From Convolutriloba macropyga (Eukaryota): 64,000 nucleotides of DNA. Where the stretch lies: NCBI RefSeq assembly GCF_964194025.1, contig NC_134478.1:5332001-5396000 (forward strand). The letters are read 5' to 3'. A program made the position numbers and the translations under genes. The notes beneath the pieces were generated by a model. It saw nothing but the letters and a program-made list of their open reading frames with translations, ran no database searches and was not told the origin of the DNA. Of this stretch, positions 1,688-36,988 are shown in pieces (position 1 is the stretch's first letter; every line of letters starts with the position of its first letter).

Positions 1688-1979
1688 TTTTAATTACTGC
1701 GTGACAAACACATCCAGCTATCGTCAACACCCACTGTGGTCTAATGATTGTACCCCCGCAAGTAGCGTGGTTGAAGGGATCGAAGACTGCATAAATTTGG
1801 ACGAAAAAGGGTCTCAAATGACTCTTGTGACCTCTAAGTATTGTCGAAATTGTGGGTAAAGCCTGACCGCTGTTATTTCTGTCATTTAAGTTTGAATTGT
1901 ATGTACTTGTGACTGATAGAGAAAACTGAACTAAATAAATTATGATTAGAAAAATGGTCAAAAAATTTTGAGAAGCCAT
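1688..1979 (-). CDS. First coding exon of a secreted trypsin/chymotrypsin-family (S1A) serine protease homolog with catalytic His replaced by Gly; later exons not identified in the window
   Basis: ATG at 1979, signal peptide MASQNFLTIFLIIIYLVQFSLS and a short propeptide. ILRG sits at the IVGG position, followed by PFFVQI and CGGTIIRPQWVLTIAGC (consensus CGGSLI..WVLTAAHC). A GTGAGT donor follows 1688 on the minus strand. Confidence 0.85.
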
Positions 1980-35900: not shown

Positions 35901-36988
35901 CAAAATTTGAAGGCAGTTTGTGTGGTACAATTAGTTTAGTGTGGTACTTTGCTGAATATCAAGATTGAAAAATCCAACTGTTGGTTTCCATAAGAACATT
36001 TCATGTGAACAAAAAGAAAAAATGTTGAAAGCAATTGTTTTCGTCCTTTATTGAGTGTATTGAAGGTAAATAAGAAGAACTTGTATGACTCGGGATGTTT
36101 CTAGGTTCTAGAATTCTTGCAAGATTTTACATTCAAAGGGCATTTTAAAAAGTCAATTGGAATCAGTTCTGCTGATCAAAATTCTTGTAAACTTCAATTT
36201 TTTTATTTTAATTTAGTTACAATACAAAACTCAGAAAATTTTTAAGAGTTTAAAATTTGCAAGATTCTTGCAAGATTTTGAATCAGGACTGAAAATTTTT
36301 CCATCGATTTCAGTTTTGTAACTTGTTTAGAAAAACAATTTGCTTCAAAGGTGTTTTTTAAAACAATAGATCCCTGATTTACTTTTTTGCCTGGATTAAT
36401 ATCTTGCAAGTTTTGAACCATTTTGCCAGATTTTTGAAGAATTGAATGCGCTCATCACTAGTGTAAATACAGCACGTGCGCCTGAGAGGCGTAAGAGATA
36501 TATTTCCACTAAGCTGAGTGGGGGGGGGGTGAAGCAGAATAGATCACACATTTAATGGCAACTAAGAGTTATGTATGACTGGCAATATGGCAACTGAAGC
36601 GAACTTTTTCAGGAAAGTTTTTCTATCGCTGAATTTCACAAAATTTCCGATTTTAGTTGGATATAGATGATACAGATGATGGCTTTTTTTTGTTCTTTTA
36701 TTTACGTTTGTTGAATGTTCTAGAATATTCTTCAAAGTGGCGTCTGAGACTGGCGACAGATTCTGTTCACAATTCCTGACTCGCTATTCACACTTTATCA
36801 CTCAGACGTCTGACCTTGAAGACTTCCGCCAACTTTTGAAGTTATTTATCGCCAAAGGGTGCTCCTGCTGCTTAAAGGACGAATACAATTATGACCTCGT
36901 CAATCATCAAATTAGTTCACAAATTGTCTGGTACAACTCAAACGATAACTCTACAAAACATTTCTTTCATCAACTATATTTTGTTTAG
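4598..36988 (+). CDS. M1-family (aminopeptidase N/ERAP-like) protein, predicted catalytically inactive; 16 visible exons, ~1044 aa, 5' end not found
   Basis: Join 4598-4836, 5484-5775, 6602-6815, 9068-9183, 10381-10602, 14205-14447, 15122-15244, 19795-20083, 23824-24065, 28246-28301, 28992-29136, 29443-29513, 29831-29965, 32458-32712, 34471-34698, 36724-36988 (3135 nt, phases all compatible, no internal stop). M1 motifs occur in the expected order: [60 protein letters not shown]....C, and a C-terminal IVWY helix. Confidence 0.9.
4917..5458. mobile_element. Foldback/MITE with ~200-bp imperfect terminal inverted repeats
   Basis: aacgtttttgaatttgacgttctggttttcaat at 4917 pairs with attgaaaaccagaacgacaaattcaaaaacgtt ending at 5458. 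The inner arms (gcttcagaacaaaaaa / ttttttgttctgaagc) also pair. Confidence 0.8.
5484..5775 (+). CDS. M1 protein exon ([17 protein letters not shown]...SPTYLYSL)
   Basis: tttaag acceptor and GTTGGT donor; diagnostic FPCFDEP motif. Confidence 0.93.
6602..6815 (+). CDS. M1 protein exon (VIFFNES...[22 protein letters not shown])
   Basis: ttatag acceptor. Of three same-phase donors, the GTTTGT at 6816 was chosen because it yields KL|DVI, matching the consensus KLDLI. Confidence 0.8.
6953..7745. repeat. Repeat element with short internal arrays (caagtctt/caagact units and ttttcgtgaa tandem repeats)
   Basis: Starts cccgtac, as does a related segment at ~6240. tcaagtctt units lie at 7030-7140, inverted caagact units at 7517-7600 and ttttcgtgaa(g/t) units at 7616-7740. 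Confidence 0.6.
8822..9018. mobile_element. MITE of the poly-C/poly-G 'cagcttagtgg...cacgtg...taactggggg' family
   Basis: Shares internal motifs and G/C runs with the copies at 28787, 30001, 30626, 36470 and 62690. Confidence 0.7.
9068..9183 (+). CDS. M1 protein exon carrying the degenerate GAMEN and HEXXH positions ([22 protein letters not shown]...VAKATTAQ)
   Basis: cttcag acceptor and GTAATT donor; phases match both neighbours. Confidence 0.85.
9304..10325. repeat. Degenerate element with agatcttaca-type subterminal repeats in inverted orientation
   Basis: Many (cgt)agatcttacat units at 9420-9830 and reverse-complement units (gtaagatc, gatctacgct) at 10090-10270. It begins cctggccgagg, similar to the cccgggccgagg terminus at 63139. 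Confidence 0.5.
10381..10602 (+). CDS. M1 protein exon ([24 protein letters not shown] plus a Ser-rich insert)
   Basis: tttcag acceptor and GTTAGA donor; aligns to WFGNLVT..WW.DLWLNEGFA.Y. Confidence 0.9.
10736..11028. mobile_element. Near-perfect ~290-bp palindromic MITE
   Basis: ccggctgggctctcgaagcgagtctgattagtcgcatttatgacaggaaggacc is exactly mirrored. The loop is only a few nt near 10880, and TTAA lies at the right flank. Confidence 0.88.
11136..12130. mobile_element. Non-autonomous CACTA/CMC-like DNA transposon
   Basis: TIR cccgggtcgag...ctcgacccggg and an AA 2-bp direct flank on both sides. Subterminal ~30-bp tandem repeats gaatggttaacttgtaagaacttgcaagtc. Confidence 0.75.
11755..11912. 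repeat. Compound (TG)n/(AG)n microsatellite
   Basis: Seen directly; lies inside the 11136-12130 element. Confidence 0.95.
14205..14447 (+). CDS. M1 protein exon ([14 protein letters not shown]...HSRAIK)
   Basis: tttcag acceptor and GTTTGA donor; AL..DS motif, ending at the K of the K|GA motif. Confidence 0.75.
14767..14922. mobile_element. Small hairpin MITE
   Basis: aaaatttaacacgcgttagtttcgaaa pairs with tttcgaagctaactcgtgttaaatttt, and gctaccattgt pairs with acaatggtagc. Confidence 0.65.
15122..15244 (+). CDS. M1 protein exon ([10 protein letters not shown]...YLVYIQM)
   Basis: tttcag acceptor and GTTAGT donor; completes KGA(T)V; phase 0/0. Not in the ORF track. Confidence 0.8.
15371..17929 (+). 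mobile_element. Helentron-associated non-autonomous element (HINE/DINE-1-like)
   Basis: 5' subterminal repeat gttccgaccc (15376-15385) with a nearby partial inverted copy. The 3' inverted repeat gggtcggaac (17883-17892) is followed by the hairpin atgtgc-catc-gcacat and a ttgttt end. The ends are T-rich with no TSD, and the interior has degenerate repeats. Confidence 0.65.
18790..18978. repeat. Tandem duplication, two ~98-bp units
   Basis: atttcgttaaaat...aaatgatagatttgaaaatatttcttggttccac.gaataccagtaaaattc occurs twice. Confidence 0.9.
19795..20083 (+). CDS. M1 protein exon ([28 protein letters not shown]...)
   Basis: gcag acceptor and GTAATT donor; matches M..W..Q.G(Y/F)PV at the domain II/III boundary. 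Confidence 0.88.
20836..20910. repeat. (TA)n microsatellite
   Basis: Seen directly. Confidence 0.97.
21300..23582 (+). mobile_element. Second, diverged HINE-like copy (3' end clear, 5' end approximate)
   Basis: 23485-23582 is homologous to 17830-17927 (gacaattaa...ggggtcggagc...taccgaacctccttgt). The internal gtaattaatgtttgttgttg at ~22350 matches ~17615. Confidence 0.5.
23824..24065 (+). CDS. M1 protein exon (...[22 protein letters not shown])
   Basis: aacag acceptor and GTTAGT donor; matches N..G(Y/F)YRVNYD...W..L..QL. Confidence 0.85.
24980..27720. repeat. Degenerate long direct repeats
   Basis: ~25140-25690 is repeated at ~27150-27715, and ~24985-25110 is repeated at ~25700-25830. Confidence 0.8.
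28246..28301 (+). CDS. M1 protein short exon ([19 protein letters not shown])
   Basis: tttcag acceptor and GTAAGT donor; matches I...DRA.LI.D.F.LA; required for phase continuity. Confidence 0.82.
28787..28958. mobile_element. MITE of the poly-C/poly-G family with an apparent 8-bp TSD
   Basis: TIR gggtctattctg...cagaacagatcc is flanked on both sides by aaaatttt. Confidence 0.8.
28992..29136 (+). CDS. M1 protein exon ([21 protein letters not shown]...)
   Basis: tttcag acceptor and GTTTGT donor; matches LDL..YL.NE. Confidence 0.85.
29443..29513 (+). CDS. M1 protein short exon ([23 protein letters not shown])
   Basis: ttacag acceptor and GTAAGA donor; phase 0/2 fits both neighbours. Confidence 0.8.
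29831..29965 (+). CDS. M1 protein exon (...[20 protein letters not shown]...)
   Basis: ttttag acceptor and GTACAT donor; AC......C...A disulfide pattern of the ERAP1-like C-terminal domain. Confidence 0.85.
30001..30521. mobile_element. Composite ~520-bp palindrome made of three poly-C/poly-G MITE units
   Basis: The outer units are inverted to each other and the central unit is self-complementary. The spacer cataatctcaattaaatttttt is mirrored as aaaaaatttaattgagattatg. Confidence 0.8.
30626..30786. mobile_element. MITE of the poly-C/poly-G family
   Basis: ggatctattctgttttgcccc...ggatcc with gaaaaaa on both flanks; highly similar to 28787-28958. Confidence 0.8.
31424..31913. mobile_element. 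Foldback-type element with inverted arrays of 14-15-bp subterminal repeats
   Basis: aaacagtcccagac units on the left and gggactgttttgtct units on the right. Confidence 0.7.
32458..32712 (+). CDS. M1 protein exon ([10 protein letters not shown]...[13 protein letters not shown])
   Basis: ttttag acceptor and GTTAGT donor; open GC-richer frame resembling E...LL.AL. The acceptor choice is less certain. Confidence 0.78.
32810..33525. repeat. Element with cttacaagat/cttgcaaga subterminal repeats
   Basis: Repeat clusters at 32835-32985 and 33455-33505. Confidence 0.5.
33803..34363. mobile_element. ~560-bp loopless AT-rich palindrome (foldback element)
   Basis: Centre ttattatcaactatagttgataataa at ~34073. 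The arms pair out to tcaaaaagttac / gtaactttttga. Confidence 0.85.
34471..34698 (+). CDS. M1 protein exon with a Gly-rich insert (LLSTIDQP...GGGGGDG...GWIGMANHL)
   Basis: ttcaag acceptor and GTAAGT donor; phase 2/2. Confidence 0.8.
36724..36988 (+). CDS. M1 protein terminal exon (...[24 protein letters not shown])
   Basis: ttctag acceptor and TAG stop; resembles the terminal NI.W...N...I..WL helix; AATAAA lies downstream. Confidence 0.85.

What the first reader, a model, noticed from the sequence alone, without database searches (positions are those of the whole stretch)
1688..36988. Two predicted pseudo-proteases in a nested or head-to-head arrangement: a His-less trypsin homolog beside or inside a zinc-less aminopeptidase N gene
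Seen: the first visible M1 exon (4598) is an internal exon with an acceptor and no ATG, starting mid N-terminal domain. I found no exon for the usual signal anchor/RLP...P.HY segment in 1-4597. The trypsin-like gene starts at 1979 on the opposite strand, and both genes lack essential catalytic residues. Inference: the trypsin homolog lies in a large 5' intron of the M1 gene. Two unrelated secretory-pathway protease folds, both apparently inactivated at one locus, could form a co-regulated non-proteolytic module (scaffold/receptor plus ligand or cofactor). Coincidence is also plausible, because serine protease homologs are common in invertebrates.
Basis: partly seen in the sequence, partly recalled or inferred. 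Interest (0 to 1): 0.7.

Follow-up and report, generated by a model that had tools for sequence, protein, structure and literature searches.

The report
Neighbouring inactive trypsin and aminopeptidase genes
In the acoel worm Convolutriloba macropyga, an aminopeptidase-N-like gene without its zinc site and a trypsin-like gene without its catalytic His and Ser start 2.6 kb apart on opposite strands; both look like real non-enzymatic genes, but nothing shows that one lies inside the other or that they work together.

Summary
Both genes exist and both lack catalytic residues. The trypsin homolog (minus strand, ATG at 1979) has Gly for His57. All 19 nearest paralog last exons in this genome also lack Ser195, so it belongs to a large, dispersed family of dead trypsins.

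The M1-like gene (plus strand, from 4598) has KATTA in place of HEXXH and a broken GAMEN motif. It keeps the third zinc-ligand Glu. An orthologous contig from another species shares the zinc-less state (MAATQ) with conserved exons and unalignable introns. That marks an old, selected pseudoenzyme rather than a decaying pseudogene.

I found no M1 5' exon in 1-4597 or in 40 kb upstream, and no RNA run was available. Nesting would need an intron longer than 14.5 kb spanning the whole trypsin homolog gene. A simpler alternative is spliced-leader trans-splicing at the 4597 acceptor: the leader known from a confamilial acoel occurs about 2,600 times in this genome.

The ortholog has no trypsin homolog within 10 kb. 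The most likely reading is two unrelated pseudo-proteases that are divergent neighbours by chance. Interest is low to moderate.

The parts
1688..1979 (-). Exon 1 of the trypsin-like serine protease homolog (SPH). It holds ATG 1979, a signal-peptide-like start (MASQNFLTIFLIIIYLVQFSLS), CGG...WVLTIAGC (His57 to Gly), and the donor GTGAGT at 1687-1682 (phase 1). The rest of the gene lies left of the window: an exon ending at -3635 (HNDVALLKL, Asp102 kept), exon -7402..-7575 (CALTGFCGMG...ICAKS), and the last exon -10221..-10419 (CRGDFGGP, Ser195 to Phe, then stop).
   Evidence: Pfam Trypsin 22.1 bits, profile 10-46; profile 80-102 and 174-218, collinear; phase-compatible GT-AG junctions between the last three exons.
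1980..4597 (.). Spacer between the two divergent genes. 1980-2800 and 4000-4597 are single-copy. About 2800-4000 is high-copy repeat. No recognisable M1 5' exon lies here. An ATG at 4531 opens a 36-codon hydrophobic ORF in another frame; it is most likely just the translated polypyrimidine tract of the acceptor.
   Evidence: (summed contig depth about 33-4,400 in the 2801-4000 bins against about 5-57 in the bins from 600 to 2800), and sequence.
4598..4836 (+). First recognisable exon of the M1-like gene (N-terminal beta domain). Acceptor AG at 4596-4597, donor GT at 4837. The first in-frame ATG is at 4697, preceded by an out-of-frame ATG at 4692.
   Evidence: (Peptidase_M1_N 21.3 bits, profile 60-112).
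5484..5775 (+). M1 N-domain exon with the [11 protein letters not shown] motif, the best conserved part of the gene. Three polymorphisms (5637, 5680, 5763) in other individuals are all synonymous.
   Evidence: PF17900 41.7 bits, above the 25.8 cut-off; 84.8 bits; ortholog 46-49% identity; reciprocal best hit.
6602..6815 (+). Predicted exon linking the N domain to the catalytic domain (ends ...GKL/D). It is phase-consistent with both neighbouring exons. Similarity to the ortholog is only marginal.
   Evidence: (score 37, positionally consistent) and splice phases read from the sequence.
9068..9183 (+). Catalytic-domain exon. The GAMEN motif is replaced by CAPEN, or by NGVVS in the other alignment register. 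The exon ends in ...VAKATTAQ, which covers the place of HEXXH (KATTA).
   Evidence: (ortholog exon 42% identical, CAPKE / MAATQ).
10381..10602 (+). Catalytic-domain exon [21 protein letters not shown]. The WW..LW..E motif keeps the third zinc-ligand Glu. A Ser-rich insert follows. The donor at 10603 is the best candidate but is not certain.
   Evidence: ortholog 53% identical; Peptidase_M1 profile 84-117, 12.3 bits, below the cut-off.
19795..19941 (+). Exon of the M1 beta-sandwich domain ([17 protein letters not shown], matching the family's M..W..Q.GYPvv.V).
   Evidence: (profile 452-495, E 0.009).
28212..29963 (+). Two weak, collinear exons of the C-terminal helical domain (28212-28299 and 29831-29963).
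   Evidence: profile 557-582 and 663-698. The order of six hits is collinear on one strand. The exons are not individually significant (control).
36680..36988 (+). It resembles an M1 C-terminus by eye only. Homology, such as it is, covers only 36878-36973.
   Evidence: 13 bits for 36878-36973, within the noise of the control.

Best explanation
Two unrelated protease homologs, each inactivated independently, are divergent neighbours in the genome of the acoel Convolutriloba macropyga. Gene A (minus strand) encodes a secreted trypsin-fold protein with the catalytic triad reduced to Gly57/Asp102/Phe195. It keeps the fold's three conserved disulfide pairs. It cannot cleave peptide bonds and most likely acts as a binding protein, as serine protease homologs do elsewhere. 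It belongs to a large paralog family in this genome whose members have lost Ser195. Gene B (plus strand) encodes an M1 (aminopeptidase N-like) protein. Its N-terminal domain is still well conserved. Its catalytic domain has lost both zinc-binding His residues, the catalytic Glu of HEXXH and the GAMEN motif, so it can neither hold zinc nor hydrolyse peptides. The same loss in an ortholog from another species, with exons conserved and introns unalignable, shows the loss is old and the gene has stayed under selection, presumably as a non-catalytic peptide- or protein-binding scaffold. The 5' end of gene B is unresolved. It is either an undetected small exon, or the acceptor at 4597 receives the acoel spliced leader and translation starts at ATG 4697. 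The adjacency is most likely coincidence. The sequence features, orthology, paralogy and orientation are shown here. The non-catalytic binding roles, the 5'-end options and the coincidence reading are inferred.
For: Gene A: Pfam Trypsin hit on exon 1; three further collinear exons with profile ranges 80-102 and 174-218; phase-compatible GT-AG junctions and the residues G57, D102, F195 and N189. 19 of 19 nearest paralog last exons lack Ser195. The nearest paralog has Lys57 and Glu195. Gene B: PF17900 hit above the cut-off; 84.8 bits against a custom M1 HMM, with six collinear same-strand hits; a phase-consistent chain of five exons, 361 codons; KATTA for HEXXH with the Glu kept; no Peptidase_M1 hit at this locus in the genome-wide scan. 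Ortholog L027: reciprocal best hit; three exons 42-53% identical while the introns do not align; MAATQ for HEXXH. Three of three exon SNPs are synonymous. No trypsin-like exon within 10 kb of the orthologous exon. Spliced leader: PMC9911081; 2,612 matches against 0 in the control; the leader is fused to the same downstream sequence at three dispersed loci. Species identity: the assembly size and scaffold number match PMC13650328.
Against: No RNA evidence exists for either gene. No RNA run in the index held even a twentieth of the sampled words of 1600-5800, although exons make up about a fifth of that stretch. Expression, exon junctions and the M1 start are therefore all predictions. Many M1 exons are indistinguishable from noise. 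One small exon of gene A is missing, because the phases of exon 1 and the Asp102 exon do not fit, and a 200-N assembly gap lies in that interval. Homology in exon 4598 reaches about 10 codons upstream of ATG 4697, which argues weakly for an upstream coding exon. A priori, a trypsin-like gene within 5 kb of a given M1 gene is uncommon, roughly 0.3% per M1 gene at a few hundred trypsin-like genes in 1.18 Gb. The coincidence argument therefore leans on the scan's many comparisons. Synteny was tested in a single relative of unknown distance.
Confidence: 0.68

Rival explanations
1. Nested genes. The M1 gene starts with one or more exons left of the trypsin homolog gene (beyond window coordinate -10419) or inside its introns, so the whole 12.4-kb homolog, or part of it, lies in a 5' intron of the M1 gene on the opposite strand.
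For: Exon 4598 begins at a good acceptor with no ATG, and about 60-90 N-terminal residues of the M1 N domain are unaccounted for. No candidate exon lies in 1980-4597. The gene has other long gaps between homology-supported exons, up to about 9 kb.
Against: No M1-like exon on the plus strand anywhere in the 40 kb to the left. No ATG, hydrophobic stretch and phase-0 donor candidate of any quality. The intron would have to exceed 14.5 kb. Trans-splicing explains the acceptor without any upstream exon.
Confidence: 0.12
2. Spliced-leader start. The acceptor at 4597 is a trans-splice site and no cis 5' exon exists. The protein starts at ATG 4697 and is an N-terminally shortened M1-like protein without a signal sequence, probably cytosolic. 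This is a sub-variant of the best explanation, scored separately because it decides between nested and head-to-head.
For: 30.2% of genes are trans-spliced in the confamilial S. roscoffensis (PMC9911081). Its exact 32-nt leader is present about 2,600 times here, often fused to downstream RNA-derived sequence. ATG 4697 has a purine at -3, while the out-of-frame ATG at 4692 has a poor context.
Against: The leader carries no ATG. The open frame and weak homology continue upstream of 4697 to 4598. The protein would lack the first strands of the N domain. There is no RNA evidence.
Confidence: 0.3
3. Functional pair. The two pseudo-proteases share a bidirectional control region and act together as a non-proteolytic module, for example a scaffold or receptor plus a ligand.
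For: Divergent orientation with only 2.6 kb between ATG 1979 and exon 4598, and about 820 bp of unique sequence next to the trypsin homolog's start. Both genes are catalytically dead.
Against: The linkage is not conserved in the one ortholog locus available. The trypsin homolog is one of many dispersed Ser195-less paralogs, whose nearest relatives sit 50 Mb away or on other chromosomes and were not seen next to M1 genes. Half of the spacer is repeat. The M1 product may not even be secreted. No expression data exist.
Confidence: 0.05
4. The M1-like locus is a dead, decaying pseudogene, with no start, an eroded catalytic domain and exons lost in noise.
For: No start codon or signal exon was found. 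Pfam does not recognise most of the exons tested. No RNA run holds the stretch.
Against: Five consecutive exons keep an open frame with canonical GT-AG and matching phases. The exons are 42-53% identical to the ortholog while the introns are unalignable, and the zinc-less state is shared, so it predates the species split. All three exon SNPs are synonymous.
Confidence: 0.1

Closest known systems
Serine protease homologs (SPHs) of the S1/chymotrypsin family, such as insect SPHs, vertebrate azurocidin, haptoglobin and HGF
   Same: Trypsin fold with a signal peptide, conserved disulfide cysteines and Asp102, but with catalytic His57 and/or Ser195 replaced. Such homologs are abundant: in the beetle Tenebrio molitor, 125 of 269 S1 members have a substituted catalytic triad (PMC11172050, abstract seen). 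They act as binding proteins or cofactors (my own knowledge of the family).
   Different: Here both His57 (Gly) and Ser195 (Phe) are lost, and residue 189 is Asn. No clip or other extra domain was seen. The protein belongs to an acoel paralog group in which every one of the 19 nearest last exons lacks Ser195 (A, D, E, F or Y at that place). I found no description of such a group.
Non-peptidase homologs of the M1 family, such as yeast Tma108 and, from my own knowledge, C. elegans MNP-1 and TFIID subunit TAF2
   Same: M1 aminopeptidase architecture used without catalysis. Tma108 binds nascent chains through the former substrate pocket (PMC11266112).
   Different: Tma108 keeps HEXXH-X18-E. This protein has lost both His residues and the Glu of HEXXH as well as GAMEN, retaining only the distal Glu. 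Its catalytic and C-terminal domains have diverged so far that Pfam barely sees them, while the FPCFDEP exon stays well conserved. The 2024 review lists Tma108 as the only M1 pseudopeptidase.
Nested genes and divergent (bidirectional) gene pairs in animal genomes
   Same: Opposite-strand genes with starts 2.6 kb apart. An apparently internal first exon suggested a host-gene intron.
   Different: No host-gene exon was found on the far side of the putative nested gene. The genome belongs to a lineage with spliced-leader trans-splicing, where a first exon that begins at an acceptor is normal.

Membership tests
Peptidase family S1 (trypsin/chymotrypsin), Pfam PF00089 | Sequence match to the trypsin domain profile | tested here: met
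   Exon 1 scores 22.1 bits (cut-off 20.6), profile 10-46. Two further exons match profile 80-102 and 174-218, collinear but below the cut-off.
Peptidase family S1 (active enzyme) | Catalytic triad His57, Asp102, Ser195 | tested here: not met
   WVLTIAGC (Gly57), HNDVALLKL (Asp102 present), CRGDFGGP (Phe195). Four DNA runs show no differing base in exon 1.
Peptidase family S1 | Conserved disulfide cysteines (42-58, 168-182, 191-220) | tested here: met
   TCGG / AGC, RGC / ICAK and LCRGD / DNCTG were read from the exon translations. The assignment is by alignment to the family pattern by eye.
Peptidase family S1 | Zymogen activation site (basic residue before IVGG) | tested here: not met
   The sequence reads ...ISTILRGH, with no Arg or Lys before the Ile. 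Paralogs read SFIIGGH.
Peptidase family M1 (aminopeptidase N type) | N-terminal beta domain (Pfam PF17900) | tested here: met
   Exon 5484-5775 scores 41.7 bits (cut-off 25.8), profile 124-186. Exon 4598-4836 scores 21.3 bits, profile 60-112.
Peptidase family M1 (active enzyme) | Zinc-binding and catalytic motif HEXXH-X18-E | tested here: not met
   An ungapped alignment anchored on WWSDLW gives KATTA for HEXXH. The distal Glu is kept (WGIEALS). The ortholog has MAATQ, with the Glu kept.
Peptidase family M1 (active enzyme) | Exopeptidase motif GXMEN | tested here: not met
   CAPEN, or NGVVS in the register anchored on KLD. The ortholog has CAPKE.
Peptidase family M1 | Catalytic domain profile (Pfam PF01433) | tested here: inconclusive
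   Only 12.3 bits (cut-off 27.7) on exon 10381-10602, profile 84-117. The locus is absent from the genome-wide PF01433 hits. Exons were scored one by one, so the whole-protein score is unknown.
Peptidase family M1 | C-terminal ERAP1-like helical domain | tested here: inconclusive
   Weak collinear hits to profile 557-698 at 28.2-29.9 kb. They are not above the reversed-sequence control.
Peptidase family M1, membrane aminopeptidase N subtype | N-terminal signal anchor | tested here: inconclusive
   No such exon was found. Short anchor exons cannot be detected by homology, and RNA data are lacking.

The most novel reading that the evidence does not exclude
The pair is a genuine, divergently transcribed module of two secreted or membrane-bound pseudo-proteases. 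One is an ancient acoel-specific zinc-less M1 scaffold. The other belongs to a lineage-specific expansion of Ser195-less trypsin-fold proteins. They would be co-regulated from the shared 2.6-kb spacer and act together as a recognition or adhesion system, in animals reported to lack the canonical immune signalling pathways (PMC12849515).
Probability: 0.04. Interest if true: 0.6.

Novelty: new member of a known kind. Interest (0 to 1): 0.25.

Why it matters
As found, it matters little: pseudo-proteases of both folds are known, and the adjacency is probably chance. Two by-products are of some value for acoel genomics. First, there is a conserved M1 homolog that has lost the whole HEXXH and GAMEN machinery, whereas the 2024 review of metallopeptidase pseudoenzymes lists only Tma108 for family M1, and Tma108 keeps HEXXH. 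Second, there is evidence for a sizeable family of trypsin-fold proteins that have all lost Ser195. The case also gives a practical caution. In this genome a first exon that begins at an acceptor need not mean a missing upstream exon, because spliced-leader trans-splicing almost certainly operates.

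Tried and rejected
1. tblastn of intronless M1 and trypsin paralogs from the same genome against the window found only the FPCFDEP exon.

2. The one large representative search used exon 5484-5775. The top named hits are insect proteins with 2-4 tandem M1 units at about 33-39% identity. They are not close kin, and no annotated protein of this genome appeared.

3. I considered that the window's gene might be a downstream unit of such a multi-unit gene. 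I rejected this because no M1 unit lies in the 40 kb upstream or in 37-64 kb.

4. Two word-index protein searches, on trypsin exon 1 and the M1 exon, were blank.

5. No run on record as RNA was found, and the four runs that were laid turned out to be DNA.

6. Walking along the ortholog contig failed, because its called genes read TGA as a sense codon and cannot be given by reference.

7. A tblastx hit at window -4546..-4457 against L027 4144-4233 contains stops in both sequences and is chance.

9. My own spliced profile alignment over-fits micro-exons at a low intron penalty. At a high penalty it cannot separate weak exons from a reversed-sequence control, so I used it only as support.

10. 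ATG 4531 followed by a 19-nt GT..AG gap (4579-4597) would join in frame to exon 4598. I rejected it as an implausibly short intron whose hydrophobic reading is just the acceptor's pyrimidine tract. Four DNA runs show no indel there.

All searches were made exon by exon, by reference.

12. The N runs (window 52964-53248, 56982-57208, and the 200-N gap at window -1041..-842) were left as they are.

Full report
**Source and setting**

The window is scaffold C11:5332001-5396000 of a 1,175,981,408-base assembly in 4,694 scaffolds. These figures match the published genome note for the acoel Convolutriloba macropyga, assembly txConMacr16.3 (PMC13650328). Earlier notes of this scan gave the species name as a lead, and the match of size and scaffold number is my check of it. 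The genome note describes no gene annotation. The large protein search returned no protein of this genome for the exon I queried. All gene models below are therefore my own predictions.

**The trypsin-like gene (minus strand)**

An ATG at 1979 opens a frame that starts with a signal-peptide-like stretch (MASQNFLTIFLIIIYLVQFSLS). The frame continues through ...ATCGGTIIRPQWVLTIAGCV... and ends at 1688 before a consensus donor GTGAGT. Pfam scores this exon as Trypsin at 22.1 bits against a cut-off of 20.6, profile positions 10-46. The family's TAAHC reads TIAGC, so His57 is Gly.

I fetched 40 kb to the left and found three more minus-strand exons in collinear order.

- One exon ends at window coordinate -3635 and reads HNDVALLKL, so Asp102 is kept.
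- One spans -7402..-7575 and reads CALTGFCGMG...RGCPEDQICAKS.
- The last spans -10221..-10419 and reads NLCRGDFGGPL...YYRWIVTVVNMH, followed by a stop.

They match Pfam profile positions 80-102 and 174-218. The last three exons are joined by canonical GT-AG introns with matching phases. Ser195 is Phe and residue 189 is Asn. The cysteines of the three conserved disulfides are present.

The phases of exon 1 (one spare base) and of the Asp102 exon (which needs two) do not fit. A small exon must therefore lie between them. A 200-N assembly gap sits in that interval, and I left it untouched. The gene spans about 12.4 kb.

**A family trait rather than a local event**

The last exon has at least 131 matches in the genome. 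In all 19 nearest paralogs I read, the Ser195 position holds A, D, E, F or Y. Among the 16 exon-1 paralogs that aligned, eight keep TAAHC or a near variant and eight have K, S, N or Q at position 57. The nearest paralog, at C11 55.08 Mb, has Lys57 and Glu195.

The gene in the finding is thus one member of a large, dispersed group of dead trypsins, with clusters on C2, C3, C6 and the far end of C11. Serine protease homologs are common elsewhere too: 125 of 269 S1 members in one beetle have a substituted catalytic triad (PMC11172050).

**The M1-like gene (plus strand)**

Exon 4598-4836 begins right after a pyrimidine tract and CAG. An in-frame stop lies at 4580-4582, and there is no in-frame ATG before 4697. 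The exon matches Peptidase_M1_N profile 60-112. The next exon, 5484-5775, carries [11 protein letters not shown] and scores 41.7 bits against a cut-off of 25.8. It scores 84.8 bits against an HMM I built from 42 full-length M1 proteins.

That HMM gives six hits on the plus strand that are collinear in both genome and profile: 4667, 5509, 10393, 19792, 28222 and 29844, covering profile 92 to 698. A seventh weak plus-strand hit at 59279 falls outside that order, and the minus strand gives only one weak hit.

Reading splice sites by hand gives a phase-consistent chain of canonical GT-AG exons totalling 361 codons: 4598-4836, 5484-5775, 6602-6815, 9068-9183 and 10381-10602.

The segment [12 protein letters not shown] matches the family's WW.DLWLNEGFA. 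Anchored on it without gaps, the 15 residues before WW place KATTA where HEXXH should be. Both zinc histidines and the catalytic Glu are gone, while the third ligand Glu is kept. GAMEN reads CAPEN, or NGVVS in a second possible register. Pfam sees only 12.3 bits of Peptidase_M1 on exon 10381-10602. The locus is absent from the genome-wide PF01433 hits, although canonical M1 genes are found elsewhere.

They score no better than exons found in the reversed sequence.

**Gene or wreck?**

The closest relative in the 1.8-billion-protein library is P0001, a mis-called ORF on an 84.8-kb contig of an ENA assembly. Its locus L027 holds three exons that align to window exons 5484-5775, 9068-9183 and 10381-10470 at 42-53% amino-acid identity. 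Nothing else aligns, neither introns nor flanks. The match is a reciprocal best hit: 91.7 bits against 50.8 for the next paralog.

The ortholog has MAATQ for HEXXH, CAPKE for GAMEN, and keeps the distal Glu. The active site was therefore lost before the two species split, and the coding exons have been kept since. That is the signature of a selected pseudoenzyme, not of decay.

In four DNA runs of C. macropyga (uniform coverage of exons and introns, hence DNA), the three differences inside exon 5484-5775 all fall on silent codon positions: ccg to cca, ttg to ctg, and aac to aat (codons read).

**The missing 5' end**

I found no M1-like exon in 1-4597 or in the 40 kb upstream. The tests were the HMM with all filters off, a spliced profile alignment and a scan for ATG, hydrophobic stretch and phase-0 donor. 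Homology-based methods cannot see a short signal-anchor exon, so this absence is weak.

No run on record as RNA held a twentieth of the sampled words of 1600-5800, although exons make up about a fifth of that stretch. The decisive test could not be run.

Two facts change the weighing. First, nesting would now require an intron of more than 14.5 kb spanning the whole trypsin homolog gene.

Second, acoels of this family use spliced-leader trans-splicing. In Symsagittifera roscoffensis 30.2% of genes are trans-spliced (PMC9911081). Its 32-nt leader occurs 2,612 times (up to 3 mismatches) in this genome, against 0 for the reversed pattern. At three of four loci I read, the exact leader is followed by the same non-intron sequence, which looks like retro-copies of trans-spliced RNA.

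In such a genome a first exon that starts at an acceptor is ordinary. Under that reading translation would begin at ATG 4697, which has a purine at -3. A poorly placed out-of-frame ATG lies at 4692. The product would then have no signal sequence. Against this, the open frame and weak homology extend upstream of 4697.

My estimates for the M1 5' end are about 0.3 for a trans-spliced start, 0.35 for an undetected exon in the spacer, 0.12 for nesting, and the rest for other or defective arrangements.

**Functional pairing**

The spacer between ATG 1979 and exon 4598 is 2.6 kb. About 1.2 kb of it (2800-4000) is high-copy repeat: summed contig depth reaches the hundreds to thousands in most of those bins, against tens in the flanking bins.

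The orthologous M1 locus has no trypsin-like exon within 10 kb on either side. I tested this with tblastn of the three exons, a trypsin HMM and inspection of all minus-strand ORFs. A last exon of paralog-level similarity would have been found.

The nearest paralogs of the trypsin homolog lie 50 Mb away or on other chromosomes. I see no support for a module. The caveat is that a trypsin-like gene within a few kb of a given M1 gene is uncommon a priori. The coincidence reading therefore rests on the many pairs a scan inspects, and on the lack of conserved linkage in one relative of unknown distance.

**Comparison with what is known**

Dead trypsins are a well-known kind. Zinc-less M1 homologs are known but rarely discussed. 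The 2024 review of metallopeptidase pseudoenzymes lists only yeast Tma108 for M1, and Tma108 keeps HEXXH (PMC11266112). From my own knowledge, C. elegans MNP-1 and TAF2 are further non-peptidase M1 homologs.

I file both genes as new members of known kinds. Each meets its family's fold and profile criteria and fails the catalytic ones, as set out in the membership table.

**Limits**

Every search was made exon by exon, by reference. No N run was filled.

**Verdict**

Nesting and the module idea are unsupported. Interest is about 0.25.

Noticed in passing
L028-L031 (G000 C1: 6265183, 7415370, 19470236, 27789419) and about 2,600 further places: The exact 32-nt spliced leader of Symsagittifera roscoffensis occurs 2,612 times (up to 3 mismatches; 0 in the control) across all chromosomes. 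At three of four loci read, it is followed directly by the same sequence (GATGAGCCAGCGAGGCATG...) rather than by a GT donor, and the upstream flanks differ. This looks like a dispersed family of retro-copies made from trans-spliced RNA, perhaps a retroelement whose transcript is trans-spliced.
   Followed up: partly
L033-L051 (e.g. G000 C2:2.09-2.47 Mb, C3:4.49-4.69 Mb, C6:39.79-39.82 Mb, C11:55.09 Mb): A large paralog group of trypsin-like genes. All 19 nearest last exons lack Ser195 (A, D, E, F or Y after the conserved Asp) but keep GGPLY, the cysteines and a motif like P.CLYGVASY. Several lie in tandem clusters. This may be a lineage-specific expansion of pseudo-proteases.
   Followed up: partly
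window 4837-5483, especially about 4915-5460: The first M1 intron is mostly a long palindromic element. Inverted arms lie at 5040-5058/5295-5313 and 5075-5094/5257-5276, and by eye at about 4921-4960/5420-5458. In contigs of three of four DNA runs, 408 bases (5052-5459) are skipped. This looks like a presence/absence polymorphism of a hairpin (MITE-like) insert inside an intron with normal GT-AG ends.
   Followed up: partly
window 2800-4000: High-copy repeat between the two genes. Summed contig depth is about 33-4,400 in the 2801-4000 bins, against about 5-57 in the bins from 600 to 2800, with many short joints typical of repeat variants.
   Followed up: no
L027 (ENA ERZ26859043, contig ctg81862) and protein P0001: The gene calls on this eukaryotic contig read TGA as a sense codon, so P0001 runs from a real M1 exon on into the intron. 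Only its residues 13-103 are real coding sequence. L027 14200-16500 is a tandem repeat that gives spurious protein matches.
   Followed up: yes
P0002-P0022 (e.g. Polistes fuscatus XP_043498883.1, Anthophora CAK9796737.1): Many insect gene models of 1,300-4,087 residues hold two to four complete M1 aminopeptidase units head to tail, with later units starting at the RLP..HY region. They are either true multi-unit proteins or fused tandem genes.
   Followed up: no
window 10480-10840 and 11700-11930: Low-complexity stretches inside the M1 gene: a Ser-rich run within exon 10381-10602, His- and Gly-rich open frames just after it, and a (TG/TGC)n microsatellite near 11.7-11.9 kb.
   Followed up: no
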